From assembly GCF_006345805.1 (NCBI RefSeq), contig NC_043004.1, positions 24,118,001 to 24,182,000 of the forward strand: a stretch of 64,000 nt of DNA. The letters run 5' to 3'. The stretch is from Octopus sinensis (lineage: Eukaryota). This document shows positions 4 to 42,684 of the stretch, piece after piece; position 1 is the first letter of the stretch; every line of letters starts with the position of its first letter. Both the position numbers and the translations under genes were made by a program. Below the pieces are notes generated by a model. It worked only from the letters and a program-made list of their open reading frames with translations, was not told where the DNA came from and made no database searches.

Positions 4-48
<45 letters not shown>

Positions 49-249
49 TAATTGAAAGAATTATCTTATTAAGGATAATTCGAAAGATAACCGATAACTG
101 GGTAGCAAATTCACATCAGAAAGAACACGGTTGAAGCTACGTCCCTAGGGCATAGACTACGTATCTTCGTGCGGAAATTTGTATGTTTATCTTAAAATTA
201 TAAGTATATGAAAGAATGGAGTTGAAGGACTAGTTAACAAATATCCTTT

Positions 250-334
250 ATTCTCGACATATGTTTCGAAGGCTGCATATTCCTAATTCCGAAGGAATAA
301 GGAGTACATTATGCAGATTTCTCATCAGGAAAAT
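250..334 (-). ncRNA. Type I hammerhead ribozyme motif, inverted copy
   Basis: Reverse complement of the left arm gives the same core, helices and GUC triplet (cleavage between 256 and 255). Helix II includes CTGCATA/TATGCAG. Confidence 0.8.
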
Positions 335-408
335 CAAGGAACTTATGTCGACATCAAAATGCACAAAAAACTTTTACCTGACGGCTCTCAAGGAGCCCAT
401 GACGATAA

Positions 409-493
409 ATTTTCCTGATGAGAAATATGCATAATGTACTCCTTATTCCTTCGGAATTAGGAATATGCAGCCTTCGAAACATATGTCGAGAAT
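409..493 (+). ncRNA. Type I hammerhead ribozyme motif, predicted cleavage after GUC at 487
   Basis: ATTTTC(409-414)-CTGATGA(415-421)-G...C helix II (422-475)-GAAAC(476-480)-ATAT-GTC|GAGAAT. Helix I ATTTTC/GAGAAT pairs; helix III is the palindrome ACATATGT. Confidence 0.8.
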
Positions 494-569
494 AAAGGAT
501 ATTTGTTAACTAGTCGTTCAACTCCATTCTTTCATATACTTATAATTTTAAAATAAATATATATATATA

Positions 570-1620
570 TTCTCTCAGACATTTCACTCCGGTGATAGAC
601 ATTTCTTCAGCCTAGTACTTATTTTATCGGTCCGCTTTACCTAACAGCTATGTTACAGTGAGGTAAACACACCAACAAGCGGTGGGGGGAGGGGGACAAA
701 CACATGCACAAACACATACACACACATACACACATAAAAGGTGTGGTAGATAAACTGTTATCGAAATTGAGCAAAAAGGAAAATAACACTGACATCTCAT
801 TTTAGCTGATATACTTACAAAACTTACATTAAACTTTCTTGAAATACTAAAATGTAAATTTATTCCTTAAAACGCCATTGGCTTCAACCAGGGCCTTCAG
901 ACGAAGCTGGAATCTGCTGCAACTCTTCTGGACGGTCTCCTTGTTAAGTTGTAGAATATTGCCATAATATTGCCATAATCCTTGGTGTTATAGGGAGTTT
1001 TGTTGGTCTCTCGCTCACCTGCGGCCCACACATAATAATCTAGGATGTTGCAGTCTGGGGAATTAGGTGGCCAGATGTTAGGGGTGATGTGGTCGCAGAA
1101 ATTGTCTGACAGTCATGACTGGGTTCTCCTGCTTGTGTAGCATTGTGCACAGTCCTGTTGCCAGACATAGGGTCTTCCAGCAGCCACCCACTTGACTGTC
1201 GGCATCACTAACTCCTCCAAGAACTGGATGTAAGACTTCGTGTTGAGTCTGAGGCCGTGTTGGAAGATGAATGGAGGCATAACGTCGCCATCACTAGTAA
1301 TTACTCCAAACACCATGATGTTGACTGGATGTTTGATTTTTATCACTCTCGGTACATATCCTCAGATAGTATTTTCCTCAGATTTACACGCAAATACTCT
1401 GAAATGTTCGTATTGGTGCGTCGGGTGCCGAATACCATATATATATATTTTCCAAATTTCTGGCAGAGCGAATTGCGTCATGGTGCTGTTCTTCACATAG
1501 AAGGTGCCCAATTATTTCTGCTATACTGTGTAGACGTCAAAATTAAAAAGAAATAATGCGCATGCGCGAAATCAAAAATATAAAATGGCGACAATTTACC
1601 CATCACATACTGTGTGTGTG

Positions 1621-7443: not shown

Positions 7444-7529
7444 AGTTTTGTTCAAGTAGTGAGTTCTTGTTGGGTGACTTGTATCCAGTTTTGTTCAAGT
7501 AGTGAGTTCTTGTTGGGTGAGTTATATCC
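7444..7529. repeat. 43-bp tandem duplication at the LINE ORF2 C-terminus
   Basis: Units 7444-7486 and 7487-7529 (agttttgttcaagtagtgagttcttgttgggtga...), about 2 mismatches. Confidence 0.9.
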
Positions 7530-9881
7530 AATTATGGGTGGCTTATCTGGTATTCTTTGAAGGAATCTATCCAGACTCTGTTTGAAGTTGATGGGATCCT
7601 TTTCCTCTTTGATCTCCCTCGGGACAATGTTAAATAGGGCAGGGCCTGTTGAGGAAAAGAAATTATGTTGCAGTGTACATGTATGTTGTGATCTTGAATT
7701 TGGCAGGGGACGTATAGCCCGTGGTCCAAGTCTCGGATGAACCTTGAAGCTAATGTTTAGGTCGTTTGGGCAAAGTTGGCGGTATATTTTCCACATCGTA
7801 CAAATGATGTACCGCTCACGGCGACGCTGGAGGGAGTAAAGTTTCAAGGCTTTAAGGCGATCCCAATAGTCGAGAGCAGCCATGCCTTCAATTTGTTTAG
7901 TGAGAGCCCTCTAGGGTGACTCAATTCTGGAGATGTTTTGTCTTGTGTGAGGAGACCACAGTGGGCAGCAGTATTCAAGATGTGGCCGTACAAAGGATGA
8001 AAAAAGTGGTATGATGACACCTTGTTCTCTGGACCGGAAAGTTCTTAAGATCCAGGAACTCATCCTACGAGCTGTATCGACCTTCTTGTTGATGTGTGCA
8101 CTCCAACTGAGATCGTCATCAACAATTACACCCAGGTCTCTGATATTGTTAGAGGTTGTGAGCGGTTCCCCTGAAGGAAGAGAGTATGGTTGTTTTAGTG
8201 AGGAATTTCTTCCAAAATGCATCAGCTCAAATTTTCCCTCATTCAGTTGCATTTTGTTTCTGTCTGCCCATTGACTCACAGCATATAGGTCAGACTGGAG
8301 TTGAGTTCGGTCTGCTTCTTCATTGACGATTTGCTGGAGCTTAGTGTCATCAGCGAATATTTTCACTTTGCAGTGATGTACGACACTGGAAAGGTCGTTT
8401 ACATAAATTATGAAGAGTAGCGGACCCAAAACAGTTCCCTGGGGAACACCGCTGGTGACTTTTGCTGGGTTTGAGTGGACTCCATCAACTACAACATGTT
8501 GTGTTCTATTCGCTAGGAAATACTGAATCCAGTGTAGAACTTTTCCACGGATTCCAACATTTGCCAATTTTGAGAGTAGGATGTTATGGTCTAATCTGTC
8601 GAACGCTTTACTGAAGTCAAGGTATATGACGTCAGAGTTCGAACCTGTTCCCAAGGCTTTGAGTACATCTTCAATGTGGTGTAAGAGCTGTGTTAGACAG
8701 TCCCTGCCACAGCGAAAGCCATGCTGATTTGAATTTAGGAGTTTGTGGGTCTCCAGGAAGTCAGCTATCCTTGATCTTAACACTCTTTCAAACACTTTAA
8801 TGATGTGGGAGGTGAGTGAGATTGGGCGATAGTTGACTGCGAGGGATCTGTTTCCCTGTTTGAAAACCGGGATGACCGACTGGGATAGAAACTTTTTCGG
8901 TATATAACCTGCGTCTAACGAGTTTCTCCAGAGGTTGGTCAGAGGGACTGCAAGTTGATATCTACATTCCTTCAGGAGACTGGCGGGAAATCTATCAGGG
9001 CCTACAGCAGAGTAATGTTTGACCTCATTTATTGCTGCTACGATGTCGGTGGCAGTGAAGGTTATGTCTGCGATTTTGTGTTGGGAGTCAGCTTCGTTCG
9101 TTTCCCTCACATCAATATCAGTGGGAACACTGAAGACAGAGCAATATTGTTTCTGCAGTATTTCTGCCATTTCTTTAGCATCGTGTTGGGGAATGCCGTT
9201 TTCATCAATCAATGGCCCAATAGGTGAGACAGTGGTTCTATGCTTATTTGCATAAGAATAGAACACTTTTGGGTTCTGTTTGATGTTTTTGATTACCCAT
9301 TGTTCCTCCACAGCTCTTTGATTTTCAATGGAGGTTTTCATGTTAGTCTGCAGATGAAGTTTTTCCAGCTCTAGTCTTTTCAATGTTGTTGAATGTGGAT
9401 GTTGCGTGTGGGAATATTTTAATTGGTTGATTTTTTTGTTGAGTCTTTTGATGCGCCTGATGAGTGTTTTTTTTTTCTTTTTAGGGAGCCGGTTTCTGTT
9501 TGTGTTAGTAGATTTCTTGGGAGCGTGTTTAGAGCATGTGTCGGTGACAATGGTTTCAAAGTGCTGCCACGCGGTCTCAATATGAGGGGAATTGAGAGTA
9601 AAAGACCAGTCGATGGAAGACAGATCCTTTCTGATTGTACCCCAGTCCGCTTTGTGGAAATTTTTGTTGTCAAATGGGTGCCATGGAGTGGGATTGGCTG
9701 GTTTGGTTTTTATACGTCGGGAATTAAGATTGCAGAGTACCATGTCGTGGTCTGAGAGGAGAGTTTTTTCGACTGAAATGCTGTGAACGTAGCTAGAGTG
9801 ATTGGTCAGTACCAGATCCAAGATCGTTTTATTCTGTCTCGTTGGTTCAAGCACTAGCTGAGTCAGGAAATACTCATCCAT
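7452..9881 (-). pseudogene. LINE ORF2 (end of APE endonuclease plus reverse transcriptase) with one in-frame TAG at 7911-7913
   Basis: Motifs LTQLVLEPTR..LDLVLTN, YRPISLTS, YLDFSKAFD, GVPQGTVLGPLLF, FADDTK, RPHLEYC. ORFs 7911-9881 and 7452-7883 are in the same frame, joined by 9 codons (RALTKQIEG). Confidence 0.95.
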
Positions 9882-9939
9882 CAGATTAAAGAGCAGTTCT
9901 GCTGCTGCCCTATCTGATGTAGAGCACTTGCCTAACTTG

Positions 9940-9942
<3 letters not shown>

Positions 9943-10037
<95 letters not shown>

Positions 10038-10038
10038 A
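9943..10038. repeat. (TA)n microsatellite at the LINE 5' truncation point
   Basis: Direct reading. Representative of dozens of (TA)n, (CA)n and (TATC)n tracts in the window. Confidence 0.99.
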
Positions 10039-12255
10039 CATGATGAGAAGCAGAAATTAATAATCGCAGCTTCAAGAACCGAATGTCAAGAATTTTGAAG
10101 TCACTTGTAGATAAATCTTCTACAGCTAACGTAAAATATAATCAATAATAACAATGATGATGATGATGATGATGACGACGACAACGACGGCAGTGGTGAT
10201 GGTGAATAATATTGGTGGTTGGTGGTTATGATGATGACTACGACGACGATGATTATGATGATGATGACGATGGTGATGAAGATGATGTGAGTTTGTTTTG
10301 CATTTGAATTTTTCTTGCATTGATATCTGAATTCTGTACAAGGTATGGTGCCTCTTCTACCACATTAACAAAACCTAAATATACAAAAAGCATATTTACT
10401 CCTGGTGTTGTTATATCCTTATTTTTCGTGTTCATTTCATACTTTTCTACTGATATTGATTTTACATTCTTCGATTCTCTGCTTCTTTGATAATCCATTC
10501 TTTCTTCTTGGAACTAAGGTGAATTTCATTTCTTCTGTTTTTTTTTTTTATATTGCATCTAGTCATACAAAATTGTATTATATATGTTTATATTTTTCGT
10601 AATTCTTGTATCCAACCAAGTTATCATTCTTTGTTCACTCTCCTGTGTTATATTTAGTCTTCATTATGTCGAAACATTTGCATGCAAGATGAAATAATTA
10701 ATAAACAAAGCAACACCATCAACAAAAGATGCTAAAATGAAACGATGTTTCACAATAAATATGTTTTATTTTATTTGAAACGATTTTATAATCAGGAACT
10801 TAATTATATCAGTTATAATTATGTCAGAACCTAATTATAACTGGCATAACATAATTAATACCCATTACATAATGACAGGTTAACATCACTCACTACCATA
10901 TCAGCTAATGCCATAGCCCCGTAGTCTTTGTGGAATTGTAGGCGCGCTGGCGTAACATATAGCGGAGGCAATTTTTTGTCATCTCTAATCAGAGCCCAGA
11001 TTCAATTTCTTCCGGAAGGTGAGAAAAAGATTGAGAGAAAAATCTAAGGGAACAAAAGAATCAACGTCGATATAGAAGGAACTGGTACTTTATTTATCGA
11101 TCTTTGTGTGTTGATGAAAGGCCAGGCCGACCCAAGCCAGATTTCAAAACACACTAGGATAAATTTCTCTCTGAAATACCAGATGAACACACATCGTGGC
11201 AGGAGACACAGAAAAGAGCAGCTCCCTCCAGCTAGATTCTTTACCAAAGGCAGTACATAATGGAGATTCAAAAACACCGAAAGGCGGTGCTCCAGCATGG
11301 CCCCGTCCTCTAGCTGTCACGAAGAGGAAGAATAAAAGATTGAAAGAATAAATACCATAACGATATGAATCTTCTACCATGATTCTTCCGAAATTCCGGC
11401 GACTAAAATGGTGCTTTAATACAAATTATGATAGATGTCCCCTTTCGAATATAATGCTCACAATATTCGAAAATTAGAGAGCAAAACTCATGCGATTTTT
11501 AAACCAATATCCTATCGTCTTATTGCTGAAGATTTTTGCCACATGAAGGTAACAAGTATCGCCAGTACTAGAATTTTTTTTTTCTTCTTTACCTTTTGAA
11601 AACCGAAACTAAATTTTTAGACTATCTGAAAGCATTAACTGATGACAAGTGATATTTCAAAATATTTGTGTTTGTGGGAGAATACTATGGTCAATTCCAA
11701 CGAGAGTTATATCAACAGAAATATCTCTTAGCAAAATGAAACATAGTAAACGACACTTTTGAGGTCTAACATGTCACAAGCCCGGGCTGTTGATGTAGCA
11801 AGTTTCAGAAATTGATTTAAACAAATACTATTTTGCAGATTAAAAAAAAAAAAAATAACTAGAAAAGGTCATTTCATTAAGTGATTGACTTAGGTTGTCT
11901 TTTTTTATGAATTATATTATCATTGCTTGGTTATTTGGTAATTCAATAAATGATCTACGAAAATTTATACACCATTCTATTCAAACATCTTCGCATTATC
12001 CATCATGTTCAATGATGCCATACTAACCATTCAAAAATGTAATCGATGGCGCATAATTTTTTAGCAAAGACTATGTACATCAACAGCATATTTCTTTTCG
12101 GATTTAAGGATTATTGGGATCTTTGATACTCAATTCTGGCAATGTCGATTTTCCTACACACGGATGTCCCAGAACAGTGTTGTTTTAGCGAGCAAATTTT
12201 CTCTCTAAAGTAAGGATCGGTATAGTCATACAAACATACATACATGCATACAACC

Positions 12256-18855: not shown

Positions 18856-19158
18856 TATGTAAGCACATACACACACACACATATATATATATGTGTGTAT
18901 TTATATATATGTAGGCATATATGGTTATATGCATATGTGTTGATGTATGTATATATATTATATATATGCTCATAAACATTTTGTCACACACACGCGAACA
19001 CACCATCAACAATATAATTCGCTAAATTATAGGGCAGCAAAGATCGATTACAACAAACATTAAGAGTTATGTTTGACGTTAATACACCGGTCAATGATAT
19101 ATAATCTACGATATTTCCCCTATCTGGAATATCAAGAAAATATACATAAGGTATATCT

Positions 19159-19159
<1 letters not shown>

Positions 19160-19206
<47 letters not shown>

Positions 19207-19230
19207 CTGGTGGTGGTAGTAGTAGTAGTG

Positions 19231-19266
<36 letters not shown>

Positions 19267-19273
19267 CTGGCAA

Positions 19274-19358
<85 letters not shown>

Positions 19359-19359
19359 T

Positions 19360-19400
<41 letters not shown>
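19160..19400. repeat. (TAG)n/(TGG)n trinucleotide microsatellite
   Basis: Direct reading. Similar tracts at about 26545-26690, 35740-35910 and 36030-36150. Confidence 0.98.
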
Positions 19401-19527
19401 TTCATTAAATGTATAAATCGAAACCAAATCACGTTTTTTGAAACACAATAACATATACACCACTGTGATGGGAACTACATTTTAAAATTTCAGTATTAAA
19501 CCTTATCTTCATCTTCATCTTTTTTTT

Positions 19528-36915: not shown

Positions 36916-37130
36916 CCTTTCTACTATAGGCATAAGGGTTGAAATTTCGCGGGGAAGGAGCTAGTCGATTACTTCGACTCAACCGGGCTCAACAGGGCTC
37001 AACCGGGATTTTTTTTTTTTTGTCGAGCCCGAGAGGATGAAAGACAAAGTCGACCTCCGCGGAATTTGAACTCAGAATGAAAAGATTGGTGAAATTCCGC
37101 TAAGCATTTTGTCCGGCGTGCTAATATTCG
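36915..37130 (-). mobile_element. SINE family A, second tandem copy about 120 bp into the intron
   Basis: gaggatgaaagacaaagtcgacctccgcggaatttgaactcag...cggcgtgctaa. Confidence 0.85.
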
Positions 37131-37246
37131 AACTTCATACTTTTCTTCCATGTTTCTTTCGATGAAGTTATGTTTAATTTGCAAAACTATGAAACTGCAT
37201 AAAATTTCTGGACAGTCGACTGAATGATAGAAAAATCTTATGACAT

Positions 37247-37252
37247 ACTTAC
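37247..37252 (-). promoter_or_regulatory. 5' splice donor GTAAGT, phase 1
   Basis: Plus-strand acttac at 37247-37252 is a perfect consensus donor where family similarity ends. Confidence 0.85.
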
Positions 37253-38030
37253 TTCTAGCCTCCAATGACGCTTTTATAAGATGCTCGGTGAAATCCTCGA
37301 TAGTGTCATAAACTTTTATATTCCAAACTTCTGTGTTATAGTAGGAATTCCAATTTTTAAATATGCCTTCTAAGGTGAAATAACAACGCGACATCCCTTT
37401 CGAATCGTCTTCATATTGTTCATACATCAAACCAATTTTCGTCCAATTAAAATGCAAACACATTCTCAAGAAAAACTCGCCGGCTTTATAAAACGTTCCA
37501 TGAACTCGTGTCAACAGCCCGTAGTTAGTCTTATTTCTGAAAGCATTTACCATTGCCCCAGCACTCAACACAGGAATTCCCCAGTAAGGGGAAAATCTGG
37601 CAATTGGTGCAATACTGTACTCACAAACGGGCCCAATGAATACATGGGCCAATTTACGCATGTCAATGGCGGCCAAGGGAGCCAAAATGTCGGAACATTG
37701 AGAATCATTATAGTAAAGTTCAATCCTATAATTTGGTAGCAGATTGTATCGATATTTGACAGATTCTACGGCATACTCCAGTGCTGGACGCGTCCTCGAA
37801 ATAGAATAAGAATACCAATTGTTCTCTGGCAAAATAACCGATATCCTCAAGATTTTTTCCGTGTTATTATTATCATTATTATCGTTGTTATTTTTGCTTT
37901 TGTTGAGATTAATATTACTTAAATTATTATTGTTATTATTATTATTATTATTGTTATTATTAACTTCTAATCCGTTTAAGAAACAAAGAGTATGAAACAA
38001 GGTAAAAAAAAATAAACACAAAGGTTTCAT
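37253..38030 (-). CDS. First coding exon of a natriuretic peptide receptor-like / receptor guanylyl cyclase gene (signal peptide plus N-terminal part of the ANF-receptor ligand-binding ectodomain)
   Basis: MKPLCLFFFTLFHTLCFLNG signal-like start; motifs LRISVILP, RPALEYAV, DSQCS, FIGPVCEYSIAPIARFSPYWGIPVLSAGA, LTRV, HFNW; ends ASLEAR + A followed by GTAAGT. An alternative in-frame ATG lies at 38075. Confidence 0.9.
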
Positions 38031-40232
38031 AATTAAATAAATATTCCGCTTCTTCGGCTGAAATGAAATGATCATTTCGGGTTTAGAAATAGAACAACCA
38101 CAGTAACATTTACAAACGATTCTAGTTTCCTTTCTGTTTTCTTTGTTTGTTTTTTTTTTTCGTTTCTTCTTTGTTTTGGATATAATCCTAGTTATGTGCT
38201 TCACTCGGTTGGGTACTCATTATTCAAAAATCTATAAAAATATCAAGTAACTACAATCAGTTACCGATTTTGAAGAATTTCCTTATGGAACGGGGTGAAG
38301 TATGGTGGAGAATGTTTAGAAATTAAATTTACACATACATGCATGTATACAGAAAACACGTATAAGCTTAGGTTTGCTGGATCTATCTCAACCTATCTTT
38401 CATATTTCACAAACAAACACACACACACACACACATATATAAATATGAGTGGGTGTATAAGGAAGTGAGAGGAGGTGTAGAATTAACTTCTTAGAGATAT
38501 ATTAATTTCGATGTATAATATAGAATGGAATATAAACATGTATATGTGTATGTATATATGTATGTATAAATATATAGAGAGCGAGCGAAAGAGAGAAAGA
38601 GAGAGAGATGGGGAAGAAGGAGAGAGAGAGGGAAGGAGAGAGGGGGGAGATAGAGAGTTAGCAAGAGAGAGAAGGGTGTGAAAATAGGTGTTTAGAACTT
38701 AGCCGTTGTGTATTTGGATGTTTACACCCTACGTACTCAAAGTGGAGAAATTAATTTATTTATAGTTTAGCAAAGCGATTTATCTAAAGTGTGACAAAGG
38801 AACTACCAATAACATATATTTGTGTAAATATTTGTACGTGTGTAAAAACATGTATGGATTCGTATCTAATTATACAAGTCCCTTTTTGTCTTCCTCGAAA
38901 GCTAATACCTGCATTCAGTTAGATATATTTTTTATAATAACCAGGTATATTTCTGCCTACGACTCGTGGGGCTGTTTGTGCACTTGTAAAACATTTTACT
39001 CAAAAACATGAAACTATATTAGCATGCTTACAATACCCTACAAAATACGATCACACGCACACACATTCACACACAAACAGACATGCATGCATACATACAC
39101 ACATAGGCACACACAGGTGCGCGCATTCGAGTCAATAAACGAAGAAGAAACAAAAACACGTGAAAGTAATCAGAATAACAAAATAAATGTGCAATGATAC
39201 CACGTCACCGTAACAAACGTAAACAATATCTGTATGTGAATGTATACATATATAAATATATATAAATACGTATATATGTGTGCGTGTGTGTGTGAGTGTG
39301 TCTTTGGAATGTATATGTGTGTATAAATAAAGCTACTGGCCTTGAGTTTAGTTACCAGTGAAGATTTGATACTGTGTCAGATCGGAAAAAAGCAAACACT
39401 TTACGGAACTTTCTAAGTGAGTAACACGAGGCCAGCCAGCGGAGCGTGGAGCAGCCGGCATGCACAGTAATAAACCATAATAGACAACATGCCACCACAG
39501 CTACTAGTACGGGCTGTACCAGTCACTACAGTAATAACAACAATAATAGCAGCAGCGATGTTTGCAGTTTCCAGTAATTATCCCCTTCATCAAAGAGAAT
39601 GAAATTAGTCCAACTAATTATCCATCGTCAACTTGAATGAAAGAAAATACTTCCATTTCTCTGCCGCCTGTTGCTGTGTCTTCCAACTTGCACCTTGCTT
39701 CATTTGTCTCTCACTCAAGCTTCTCACTCAATCTCTCTCTCTCTCTCTTACTTTAACTGTTTGTACACACACCCACTTCAATACTCATTCACTCTATCTC
39801 TGTCTCTTCCTCACACAGACACACACACATATATATATATATATATAGTCTCTTTCCCTCTTTCTCACACGCACACAGGCGTGTATTCTTTGTAGCACAC
39901 GCACACGCTCTTGTTCTCTCTCTCTCTATTCCCATCCCTCGGTCCCTCCTCTCTTCTTCCCAATTATCTATCTTCCTCTCCTTCCTCCCCTTCACTCTCG
40001 CCTCTCTCTCTCTCTCTCTCTATCCCTCCCCTTCTCTCTCTCTCTCATTTAATATCTGCCACTCTGTTCCGCTATCTTACCCCCTTATCTGTATAACTTT
40101 CAACTTACACACGAACGTATAACCACATATACACACATAAACACACCGCCGCACGCGCGCGCACTCATTTACGAAGACCATCACTCAAACTCATACGCAA
40201 ACACAAACATAAAATATTCACACACACGCACG

Positions 40233-40622: not shown

Positions 40623-41069
40623 AGAAAGAGATAGAAAACAGGGGAAGAGAAAGGGGGGCAGAGGCAGAGAAGGTGGGGTAGAAATGGGGAAGAAAGAAAA
40701 GGAAAAGGCGAGAGTGGGAAGGGGAGAGAGAAAAAGCGAAAACGAGAAAAGGGAGAGGTTAAAATGGAGAGGGGAGGTAGAGAGAGGGTGAATGTGGAAG
40801 GGGGGGGGGGAAGGGATGACAAGGGGAGAGGGTGGCAAGGGGGAGATGGGTAGCAAGGGGGAGATGGTTAGCAAGTGGAGGGTTGACAAGGGGAGGGGTG
40901 GCTAGGGGAGCATGAGTGAATGAGGGAGAGTGAAAGGAGAAGGGGAAGGGGAGCAGTAGAGGATGGGCAGAGGAGGGGACAGGGGTAGAAGTAGAGGAGG
41001 GCTGGGGATAGAAGGGAGACAAGGAAGGAGGGAGAGGCAGAGGAAGAGAGAGGTGAAGGGAAAGAGAGA
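40575..41069. repeat. Polypurine (G/A-rich) tract with many G-runs, upstream of the receptor exon
   Basis: Nearly pure purine on the plus strand; includes a subrepeat of about 17-18 bp (caagggggagatgggtag) at about 40820-40910. Confidence 0.9.
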
Positions 41070-41169
41070 NNNNNNNNNNNNNNNNNNNNNNNNNNNNNNN
41101 NNNNNNNNNNNNNNNNNNNNNNNNNNNNNNNNNNNNNNNNNNNNNNNNNNNNNNNNNNNNNNNNNNNNN
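41070..41169. other. Assembly gap, 100 N
   Basis: Run of N. Confidence 1.
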
Positions 41170-42684
41170 GATCCTATCGACTAAAGTTTTTCCAAGGTGG
41201 TACCCCTCCATGGCCGTAGTCTAATGACTGAAACAAGTAGAAGATACTATATATCTAACTATCTATCTATATACAGAAAGATATACATATACATACACAA
41301 CACACATATAATAATATATGATATGTATATATATCTATTATATATATATATATATATTTTAAAACTGTTGTAATAATTACAACATTTAATAAAATGATGT
41401 AGTACGAAACGATCGTACCAAATTAACGGAGTCATTCTTGTTGCTTATTTTGATTATAATCACCCCACGGATTTTTATGGATAACACCATACAGAATCCT
41501 GATGCATCTAAATTAAGTACCATATTCATTTGAATCCAAATTTTTGCTGAACTTATATATATATATATATATATATTAATCTATCTTTCTGCCTTCAGAT
41601 ATATTAGTTTATCTAGTTACTTATATGTCTATTTATTCAGGTGTATGAGTTTGTATTTATCTCCATATATGTTAATCGATGTGTTTGTATATCTGTTTAC
41701 TTAGCTACCTATTTATCCATCAATAGTCTTGTTTGTGTTCGGGCCTTGTGCCTAGAGTAGAAAAGAATATTTCTCTTCGCGTGTATCTCTCTCTATTTAT
41801 CTATCGCCATTTAATTTATTTTGTCTTATTACCGATATAACGATTCTCTCTAATCTCTCTCACCTTCTCTTTATTTATTTCTCTCTCTTTCCCTCTCTCT
41901 GACACACATACTGCAATCATGATTTTGAACACTGACCCCATACAGTTCAAGTTCAGTACCTACATTACCACTGACACCACCATTATTACTACCATCATCA
42001 TCATCATCATCATCACCACCACCACCACCACCACCACCACCACCACCACCACCACCATCATAATTATTATTATCATCATCCTCATCATCACTATCTTCAT
42101 CGCGGGCATCATCATAGCCAGAATGAGGACCACCACCACTACTGTCTTCATCCTTGTTGTCGTCACCACCAACATCACGACCGACATCATCATCATCATT
42201 AACAACATCAGCATCGGCGCTAACATTATTTCGAACAATCTAGAATTTACGACCTTTGATGCTGGATCTTCTATTTTATTCAGTTCAATGTCCTTACTTC
42301 GCCGGCCCTTCCCTACTCCCTCTCTGTTTGTAATTAGAAAACATTCGCCAAACTGTATATATTTCCATTCGTTCAGCCACTGTCGAAACACTGACTAAGC
42401 ACGCCAATACCCGCTTATCTATGCTGATTACGTAATGCCATCTGTCAGAGTGTCCTGTTGATCAAATGATTAGTACCTCGGTTAAATTTAAATTATGCAT
42501 ACAAAAAGCCGGAAGAGATCTTGCGAAGGATCTTGTAGAAGTCCAACAGGAAGAAAGATAATACTGAAATATTGTGCCCAGCGGTACCTGAACATGGAGT
42601 GTATACCGCTAGAGCAAACACAAGATATATTCTGTCTTTCGCTATAATTACTCCACTGTCATTTTGCCGCTTTATTTAATACAA

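What the first reader, a model, noticed from the sequence alone, without database searches (positions are those of the whole stretch)
186..557. Self-masking pair of hammerhead ribozymes in a 149-bp foldback
Seen: each arm carries a complete type I hammerhead (CUGAUGA, GAAA, GUC, 6-bp helix I, palindromic helix III ACAUAUGU). The orientation means the antisense arm is transcribed before the ribozyme arm in either direction. Established: Penelope-like elements carry minimal hammerheads with palindromic helix III in their terminal repeats and often leave inverted termini. Inference: the duplex would silence cleavage, which could make the insertion tolerable in a transcribed intron or act as a folding-dependent switch.
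Basis: partly seen in the sequence, partly recalled or inferred. Interest (0 to 1): 0.85.

Follow-up and report, generated by a model that had tools for sequence, protein, structure and literature searches.

The report
Inverted pair of retroelement hammerhead ribozymes
Two near-identical 149-base copies of a mobile-element end, each carrying a hammerhead ribozyme motif, sit head-to-head in an animal genome; this layout is already known for Penelope-like retroelements, and nothing here shows a purpose-built ribozyme switch.

Summary
Arms 186-334 and 409-557 are a 149-nt inverted repeat with 3 mismatches and a 74-nt spacer. Each arm carries a complete type I hammerhead on opposite strands (409-493 +, 334-250 -). 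Rfam Hammerhead_1 scores both at 29.2 bits, E about 7e-6 when each arm is searched alone, below the gathering score of 34 because helix II is 54 nt long. My structural descriptor finds only these two sites in the window and none in 200 resampled windows.

Helix III is 2 bp plus AUAU inside the palindrome ACAUAUGU, the dimer-dependent type described for Penelope-like elements (PLEs) and animal retrozymes. Both copies have their 5' ends at the centre and 3' ends outward, next to TA-rich DNA. That is the published head-to-head PLE insertion layout, and opposite-strand hammerhead pairs 100-700 bp apart were reported in 2014.

The hairpin (about -245 kcal/mol) would bury the ribozyme, but any inverted repeat does this, and such hammerheads are nearly inactive as monomers anyway. 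A selected self-masking switch is unsupported.

No PLE ORF or further family copy is in the window, and no relative was found in the searchable collections. PLE membership is therefore inferred, not shown. This is a new instance of a known kind, of low interest.

The parts
186..334 (-). Left arm: a 149-nt copy of the element end, sense on the minus strand, with its 3' end at 186 and 5' end at 334
   Evidence: 146/149 identical to the reverse complement of 409-557
250..334 (-). Type I hammerhead motif of the left arm. Helix I is 334-329 / 255-250, CUGAUGA is 328-322, helix II is 321-268, GAAA is 267-264, helix III is 264-257 and C17 is 256. Predicted cleavage is at 256/255.
   Evidence: (Rfam RF00163 29.2 bits, E 7.3e-6)
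335..408 (.). 74-nt spacer of unknown origin between the arms. It contains the 10-nt palindrome ATGTCGACAT (345-354). A 19-nt stretch (340-358) is 15/19 identical to the hammerhead 3' part.
   Evidence: The interior of the spacer is not similar to the arms.
409..557 (+). Right arm: a 149-nt copy of the element end, sense on the plus strand, with its 5' end at 409 and 3' end at 557
409..493 (+). Type I hammerhead motif of the right arm. Helix I is 409-414 / 488-493, CUGAUGA is 415-421, helix II is 422-475 (54 nt, interrupted hairpin), GAAA is 476-479, helix III is 479-486 (ACAUAUGU) and C17 is 487. Predicted cleavage is at 487/488.
   Evidence: (Rfam RF00163 29.2 bits, E 7.2e-6)
558..570 (.). 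(TA)n tract directly next to the right arm's 3' end: a probable AT-rich insertion target. No clear target-site duplication is visible.

Best explanation
The locus is a head-to-head inverted pair of copies of the 3'-terminal 149 nt of a hammerhead-bearing retroelement. The element is either the terminal repeat (pLTR) of a Penelope-like element or a short non-autonomous PLE-dependent element of the retrozyme or SINE-like kind.

Both copies were most likely made in one integration event into AT/TA-rich DNA. Either reverse transcription primed from both cut strands, or the enzyme switched template. That would explain why the two 3' ends point outward and end at the same base, why the 5' ends meet at a short non-repeated junction, and why the arms are still 98% identical.

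The hammerheads are passengers of the element. They are the dimer-dependent kind, with a 2-bp helix III inside the palindrome ACAUAUGU. Any read-through transcript would fold into a roughly 149-bp RNA duplex that buries the single sense ribozyme. That is a by-product of the layout, not a device.

Shown: the repeat, the motifs, the orientation and the thermodynamics. Inferred: the retroelement origin, the single-event mechanism and the absence of function.
For: - Repeat geometry and 98% arm identity.
- Complete hammerhead on each arm, far beyond chance.
- Both sense strands run from the centre outward, i.e. head-to-head. This is the arrangement described as most frequent for PLEs, an inverted 5'-truncated copy next to the 5' end (PMC8557442, PMC3846280).
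- A short palindromic helix III is the hallmark of PLE and animal type I hammerheads (PMC4209133, PMC6765202, PMC7229834).
- Opposite-strand hammerhead pairs 100-700 bp apart are already reported (PMC4209133).
- A purified PLE protein cleaves and extends both DNA strands and prefers AT-rich targets (PMC11167929). PLEs favour (TA)n (PMC8557442), and the right arm abuts (TA)n.
- In that PLE, reverse transcription starts about 85-92 nt past the hammerhead cut site (PMC11167929). Here the element ends 70 nt past it.
- Foldback -245 / -250 kcal/mol against -12.8 for the hammerhead fold, and the core is never unpaired.
Against: - No reverse transcriptase of PLE type and no GIY-YIG domain among 81 ORFs of the window. 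The only RT is a LINE with an AP-type endonuclease.
- No other copy of the arm in 64 kb, and none in the metagenome, prokaryote-genome or viral collections. A peptide-based search also failed. Family structure, true ends and copy number are therefore unknown.
- No target-site duplication and no 30-40-bp PLE 'tail' can be seen.
- The inner edge of both arms falls exactly on the first base of helix I. That is an odd coincidence for random 5' truncation.
- Helix II (54 nt) is far longer than in described PLE hammerheads, and the extra base between A9 and G10.1 typical of them is absent.
Confidence: 0.62

Rival explanations
1. A later local inverted duplication, for example by replication fork template switching or fold-back repair, of a single pre-existing solo copy of the hammerhead-bearing element. 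It would be unrelated to the element's own integration mechanism.
For: Arms 98% identical with a short unique spacer. The spacer contains a 10-nt palindrome. No target-site duplication is visible.
Against: Both arms end outward at the same base, next to AT-rich DNA. That fits a defined element 3' end better than an arbitrary duplication breakpoint. Head-to-head pairs are a documented product of PLE integration (PMC8557442, PMC3846280, PMC11167929).
Confidence: 0.12
2. A foldback or MITE-type non-autonomous DNA transposon whose 149-bp terminal inverted repeats happen to contain, or were derived from, a hammerhead-bearing sequence.
For: Long terminal inverted repeats with a short loop, TA-rich flanks as for TA-targeting Tc1/mariner MITEs, and mariner-type domains elsewhere in the window.
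Against: No recognisable target-site duplication and no second copy in the window. An intact hammerhead with all core bases in each arm, with the 3' ends pointing outward, is what PLE integration predicts. No MITE family with hammerheads is known to me (own knowledge).
Confidence: 0.12
3. One reading: the inverted layout is selected as a self-masking device or folding-dependent switch. It would keep the ribozyme silent in a host transcript, or release it under some condition.
For: At equilibrium the duplex fully sequesters the ribozyme in transcripts of either strand.
Against: - Any inverted repeat does this.
- The evidence is a single locus, with no conservation data.
- Hammerheads with a 2-bp palindromic helix III are essentially inactive as monomers (PMC4209133, PMC6765202), and each transcript has only one sense copy.
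- Unmasked hammerhead elements are common in introns of Xenopus (bioRxiv 10.64898/2026.07.22.740005).
- Whether the locus lies in an intron is unknown.
Confidence: 0.03
4. The hairpin is used by the host as a source of small RNAs, i.e. a hairpin-RNA or endo-siRNA locus directed against the hammerhead-bearing element family. It could also be a double-stranded RNA substrate for editing enzymes.
For: A near-perfect 149-bp RNA duplex is predicted for both strands. Small-RNA profiles that switch polarity at inverted PLE structures were reported in a rotifer (PMC3846280).
Against: There is no expression or small-RNA data for this locus, and no other copy of the family could be examined. The Rfam MIR821 match (141.8 bits against a gathering score of 249, on both strands) reflects only hairpin shape.
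Confidence: 0.06

Closest known systems
Hammerhead motifs in the terminal repeats (pLTRs) of Penelope-like elements (Cervera & de la Pena 2014, PMC4209133; Lunse et al. 2017, cited in PMC6765202)
   Same: Type I topology, a full catalytic core, the G10.1-C11.1 pair and a very short helix III embedded in a palindrome that allows dimers. The motif lies near the element's 3' end. Pairs on opposite strands a few hundred bp apart are reported.
   Different: Helix II is 54 nt (3 bp + 6-7 bp + 9-bp interrupted hairpin) instead of 6-8 bp. There is no extra base between A9 and G10.1. No RT/GIY-YIG ORF is linked to it in this window.
Head-to-head inverted, 5'-truncated PLE insertions (Arkhipova 2013, PMC3846280; Craig et al. 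2021, PMC8557442)
   Same: The 5' ends face each other and the 3' ends point outward. There is a short junction containing a palindrome, TA-rich target DNA, and a target-site duplication that cannot be discerned.
   Different: Here there is no full-length copy or ORF, only two 149-nt ends. No 30-40-bp 'tail' is seen.
Animal non-LTR retrozymes: short tandem repeats with type I hammerheads, proposed PLE derivatives (PMC7229834; bioRxiv 10.64898/2026.07.22.740005)
   Same: A small non-coding unit (51-972 bp reported), an invertebrate-style helix III of 2 bp plus a tetraloop, and low GC.
   Different: Retrozymes are direct tandem repeats that yield circular RNAs after double cleavage. This locus is an inverted pair, so no unit-length RNA can be excised from one transcript.
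Rfam Hammerhead_1 (RF00163)
   Same: Full-length match to all 45 model positions, with every conserved core base present.
   Different: The score of 29.2 bits is below the curated gathering score of 34, because of a 50-nt insertion in helix II.

Membership tests
Hammerhead ribozyme, type I (Rfam RF00163) | Conserved core: C3 U4 G5 A6 N7 G8 A9, G12 A13 A14, the A15.1-U16.1 pair, and a non-G base at position 17 | tested here: met
   CUGAUGA 415-421, GAAA 476-479, U486 and C487 on the plus strand, with the same on the minus strand at 328-256
Hammerhead ribozyme, type I (Rfam RF00163) | Three helices around the core, with helix I open-ended | tested here: met
   Helix I is 6 bp (one G.U). Helix II is closed by G422-C475 and folds as a long interrupted hairpin. 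Helix III is only 2 bp plus AUAU.
Hammerhead ribozyme, type I (Rfam RF00163) | Score at or above Rfam's gathering threshold (34 bits) | tested here: not met
   29.2 bits on each arm, E about 7e-6 in a 106-nt search. No hit at gathering on the whole window.
Hammerhead ribozyme, type I (Rfam RF00163) | Self-cleavage 3' of position 17 | not testable with these tools
   This needs an in vitro or in vivo cleavage assay. As a monomer, the active fold (-12.8 kcal/mol) is less stable than the minimum-energy fold (-15.9).
PLE-type dimeric (minimal) hammerhead | Very short helix III with palindromic 15.x-16.x positions, allowing a two-ribozyme dimer | tested here: met
   ACAUAUGU is its own reverse complement. 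The unconstrained two-strand fold gains 7.4 kcal/mol over two monomers by pairing through this region, although in a non-hammerhead register. The true double-hammerhead fold could not be computed because it is not a nested structure.
PLE-type dimeric (minimal) hammerhead | Helix II of 6-8 bp with an unpaired base between A9 and G10.1 | tested here: not met
   G422 directly follows A421, and helix II is 54 nt long and interrupted
Penelope-like element insertion | ORF with a telomerase-like RT and a GIY-YIG endonuclease next to the repeats | tested here: not met
   Pfam scan of 81 ORFs of >=70 aa: one RVT_1, belonging to a LINE with Exo_endo_phos_2, and no GIY-YIG. Solo truncated ends without an ORF are nevertheless the commonest form of PLE remnants (PMC4209133).
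Penelope-like element insertion | Tandem and/or head-to-head inverted 5'-truncated copies | tested here: met
   The two copies have their 5' ends at 334 and 409 and their 3' ends at 186 and 557
Penelope-like element insertion | AT-rich or (TA)n target, and an optional 30-40-bp tail at one end | tested here: inconclusive
   (TA)n lies at 558-570 and the left flank is only TA-like. No tail and no target-site duplication are recognisable.
Penelope-like element insertion | Membership of a repeated family whose other copies are linked to PLE ORFs | not testable with these tools
   The source genome is not searchable here. There is no other copy in the window and no hits in the public collections.
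Non-LTR retrozyme | Direct tandem repeats, each with a hammerhead, giving unit-length or circular RNA | tested here: not met
   The two hammerheads are on opposite strands, and no direct repeat of the unit exists
MITE / foldback DNA transposon | Terminal inverted repeats flanked by a fixed-length target-site duplication, in many copies | tested here: inconclusive
   Inverted repeats are present. The flanks GTATG and TATAT give no clear duplication, and copy number cannot be tested.

The most novel reading that the evidence does not exclude
The 149-nt arm is the complete unit of an undescribed short non-autonomous hammerhead element. Its RNA would start exactly at helix I, carry an unusually long 54-nt helix II, and be mobilised by PLE machinery in this (possibly cephalopod) lineage. 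Head-to-head insertions like this one would then act as hairpin-RNA sources that feed small-RNA silencing or RNA editing of the family.
Probability: 0.1. Interest if true: 0.45.

Novelty: new member of a known kind. Interest (0 to 1): 0.18.

Why it matters
If the main reading is right, the locus is one more footprint of PLE-type retrotransposition and adds nothing conceptual. Its modest value is threefold. It is a clean, young example (arms 2% diverged) of the head-to-head product expected if PLE enzymes prime from both strands. Its hammerhead variant has a 54-nt helix II that falls below Rfam's threshold, a reminder that curated cut-offs miss such elements. And the arm boundary coincides exactly with helix I, which could help define the unit of a new non-autonomous family once the genome is searched.

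Tried and rejected
- Rfam at gathering threshold on the whole window gave nothing. Rfam at E<=10 on 100-650 gave only a sub-threshold MIR821 match on both strands (141.8 bits against 249). I reject it as homology: it reflects generic long-hairpin shape and shares few bases.
- A search for further family copies in the window by blastn found only self and self-inverted matches, plus microsatellite noise.
- Public collections. A core-plus-helix III pattern gave 6 hits in viral contigs. That is the chance expectation, and none has helix I or II pairing. More specific patterns gave 0 hits in metagenome contigs, prokaryote genomes and viral contigs.
- Peptide trick: antisense ORFs running through the arms were searched against 5.8 billion proteins to find other copies. 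No candidate came back.
- Source organism. The ANF-receptor exon has a best hit of 57% identity and the LINE RT 53% (best named hit Argonauta hians), so the genome itself is not in the protein collection.
- Older degenerate copies in the flanks (40-185, 558-760) are not significant against shuffles.
- The spacer as a diverged copy of the unit tail: only the two ends resemble it, and the interior does not.
- The constrained two-strand fold of the double hammerhead failed, because that structure is not nested. The value of -19.2 kcal/mol is meaningless and is not used.
- The bacterial promoter/terminator scan is irrelevant for a eukaryote and was at chance level.
- Intron test: only the first coding exon of the receptor gene (37209-37859, minus strand) is detectable. 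No later exon is found between it and the locus, so intron status stays open.

Full report
**What is there.** The window is AT-rich eukaryotic DNA (34.5% GC) full of microsatellites. At its left end, the repeat finder reports one long inverted repeat, arms 177-334 and 409-566, 96% complementary and 74 nt apart. Aligning the arms base by base shows that the real repeat is 186-334 against 409-557. It is 149 nt long with three mismatches (316/427, 227/516, 191/552). The few further 'matches' outside it are only TA-rich flank.

**The hammerheads.** CTGATGA-N54-GAAACATATGTC occurs twice in 64 kb, at 415-487 (+) and 328-256 (-), and never in shuffles. On the plus strand the parts are:
- Helix I: A409-C414 paired with G488-U493, 6 bp with one G.U.
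- Core: C3-A9 at 415-421.
- Helix II: 422-475, closed by G-C, A-U, A-U and continuing as an interrupted hairpin.
- G12-A14 at 476-478.
- Helix III: A479 C480 / G485 U486 around AUAU, so that ACAUAUGU is a perfect palindrome.
- C17 at 487, with predicted cleavage at 487/488.

Rfam did not report the motif at gathering threshold on the window, nor at E<=10 on 100-650. When each arm was searched alone, Hammerhead_1 (RF00163) matched all 45 model positions at 29.2 bits, E 7.2e-6 and 7.3e-6. The score stays under the gathering value of 34 because the model has to absorb a 50-nt insertion in helix II. An independent descriptor (helix I, core, G-C-closed helix II, GAAA, helix III, non-G at position 17) finds only these two sites and none in 200 resampled windows. 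A relaxed version behaves the same. The motif is real.

**Energetics.** The isolated 85-nt arm prefers a non-hammerhead fold (-15.9 kcal/mol) over the active fold (-12.8). Two copies together gain 7.4 kcal/mol by pairing through the palindromic region, in a non-hammerhead register. The full 372-nt transcript folds into a nearly perfect hairpin at -244.7 (+) or -249.6 (-) kcal/mol. A transcript ending at 493 is already fully zipped, and core bases are unpaired with probability <=0.003. At equilibrium the ribozyme is indeed buried. Kinetic, co-transcriptional behaviour cannot be judged in silico.

**Orientation and context.** Both sense strands run from the centre outward, so the 5' ends face each other at 334 and 409 and the 3' ends lie at 186 and 557. 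This is head-to-head. The right end abuts (TA)n (558-570), and the left flank is TA-like. No target-site duplication can be read. Each arm ends 70 nt past its cleavage site. No other copy of the arm is in the window. Among 81 ORFs of >=70 aa, Pfam finds one LINE (RVT_1 plus Exo_endo_phos_2), one ANF_receptor exon and mariner-type domains, but no GIY-YIG and no second RT.

**Comparison with the literature.**
- Cervera and de la Pena (PMC4209133) showed that PLE terminal repeats carry type I hammerheads with minimal or short palindromic helix III. [quoted passage not shown] Single motifs showed no detectable cleavage, and dimers cleaved only weakly.
- Craig et al. (PMC8557442) and Arkhipova (PMC3846280) describe an inverted 5'-truncated copy adjacent to the 5' end as a typical PLE insertion product, head-to-head being the most frequent. 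They also report palindromes at the junction, a bias towards (TA)n, and target duplications that are often unreadable.
- Frangieh et al. (PMC11167929) showed that a purified PLE protein cuts and extends both strands of AT-rich targets, starts reverse transcription about 85-92 nt past the hammerhead cut site, and does not need hammerhead cleavage for insertion. The hammerhead itself cleaved only with protein present.
- Animal retrozymes have the same 2-bp-plus-tetraloop helix III (PMC7229834) and are proposed PLE derivatives. 44% of Xenopus copies overlap introns (bioRxiv 10.64898/2026.07.22.740005).

**Interpretation.** The simplest account is that one integration event of a hammerhead-bearing PLE end, or of a short PLE-dependent element, produced two outward-pointing copies in AT-rich DNA. 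The hammerheads came along as passengers. Masking by the hairpin is automatic. It is also hardly needed, because each transcript carries only one sense copy of a dimer-dependent ribozyme. I found nothing that supports selection for a switch.

The main weakness is that the family could not be examined. The source genome is not in any searchable collection. A later local inverted duplication or a MITE-type element therefore remains possible. PLE membership fails the ORF criterion within this window.

**Unexplained details.**
- The inner edge of both arms coincides to the base with the start of helix I. This is about a 1-2% coincidence under random truncation (my rough estimate, not a tool result). 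It could instead mean that 149 nt is the full unit, or that reverse transcriptase stops at the structured ribozyme.
- The spacer holds a 10-nt palindrome, ATGTCGACAT (345-354). A 19-nt stretch is 15/19 identical to the helix III/cleavage-site region, and ACGATAAA just before the right arm resembles the unit's 3' end. The interior of the spacer is unrelated.
- Whether the locus lies in an intron is open. It is 36.6 kb downstream, on the transcribed strand, of the first coding exon of a natriuretic-peptide-receptor-like gene, and no later exon is detectable in between.

**Verdict.** The functional 'self-masking switch' is unsupported. This is a new instance of a known kind, of low interest.

Noticed in passing
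window 7455-10085 (-): A nearly intact LINE: a 724-codon open frame with RVT_1 and a weak Exo_endo_phos_2 match, followed by a 143-aa ORF. The closest named relative is a hypothetical protein of the octopod Argonauta hians at 53% identity, which hints that the window comes from a cephalopod or other mollusc.
   Followed up: partly
window 37209-37859 (-), within ORF 36999-38204: The first coding exon of a natriuretic-peptide-receptor-like gene (Pfam ANF_receptor, E 3e-24), preceded by a poly-Asn run and a signal-peptide-like start. The best homologues are only 57% identical. No later exons are detectable in 1-37000, so intron 1 may exceed 36 kb and could contain the foldback.
   Followed up: partly
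window 890-1361 (-): Frameshifted ORF fragments 330 nt from the foldback look by eye like a Tc1/mariner-type DDE transposase remnant (...VWQQDCAQCYTS..., ...IWPPNSPDCNILDYYVW...). Pfam gave no hit at E<=0.01 for the three fragments. No repeat links this remnant to the foldback.
   Followed up: partly
window, location not determined (one or two of the 81 ORFs in alignment A1): Pfam HTH_48 (Mos1 transposase HTH, E 2e-13) and Transposase_1 (E 8e-7) each match one ORF somewhere in the window. A mariner-family remnant is therefore present, but ten candidate ORFs tested did not contain it.
   Followed up: partly
window 345-354: A perfect 10-nt palindrome, ATGTCGACAT, lies inside the spacer, off-centre in the foldback. 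Each half reads like the hammerhead cleavage-site sequence AUGUC|GA. Palindromes at inverted PLE junctions are reported (PMC3846280).
   Followed up: partly
window 43-61: TATAAGTAATTGAAAGAAT, right after the (TA)n tract at 9-46, matches the arm segment 199-217 at 17/19. It could be a scrap of a third copy, but it is not significant against shuffles.
   Followed up: yes
window about 40.8-41.1 kb: A run of 100 N (an assembly gap) lies inside ORF 40759-41211.
   Followed up: no
window 18984-19463 (-) and 41919-42398: Long trinucleotide arrays that translate as poly-Thr or poly-Ile/Val, and very many (TA)n, (TATG)n-like and (CA)n tracts throughout the window. The microsatellite density is unusually high.
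   Followed up: no
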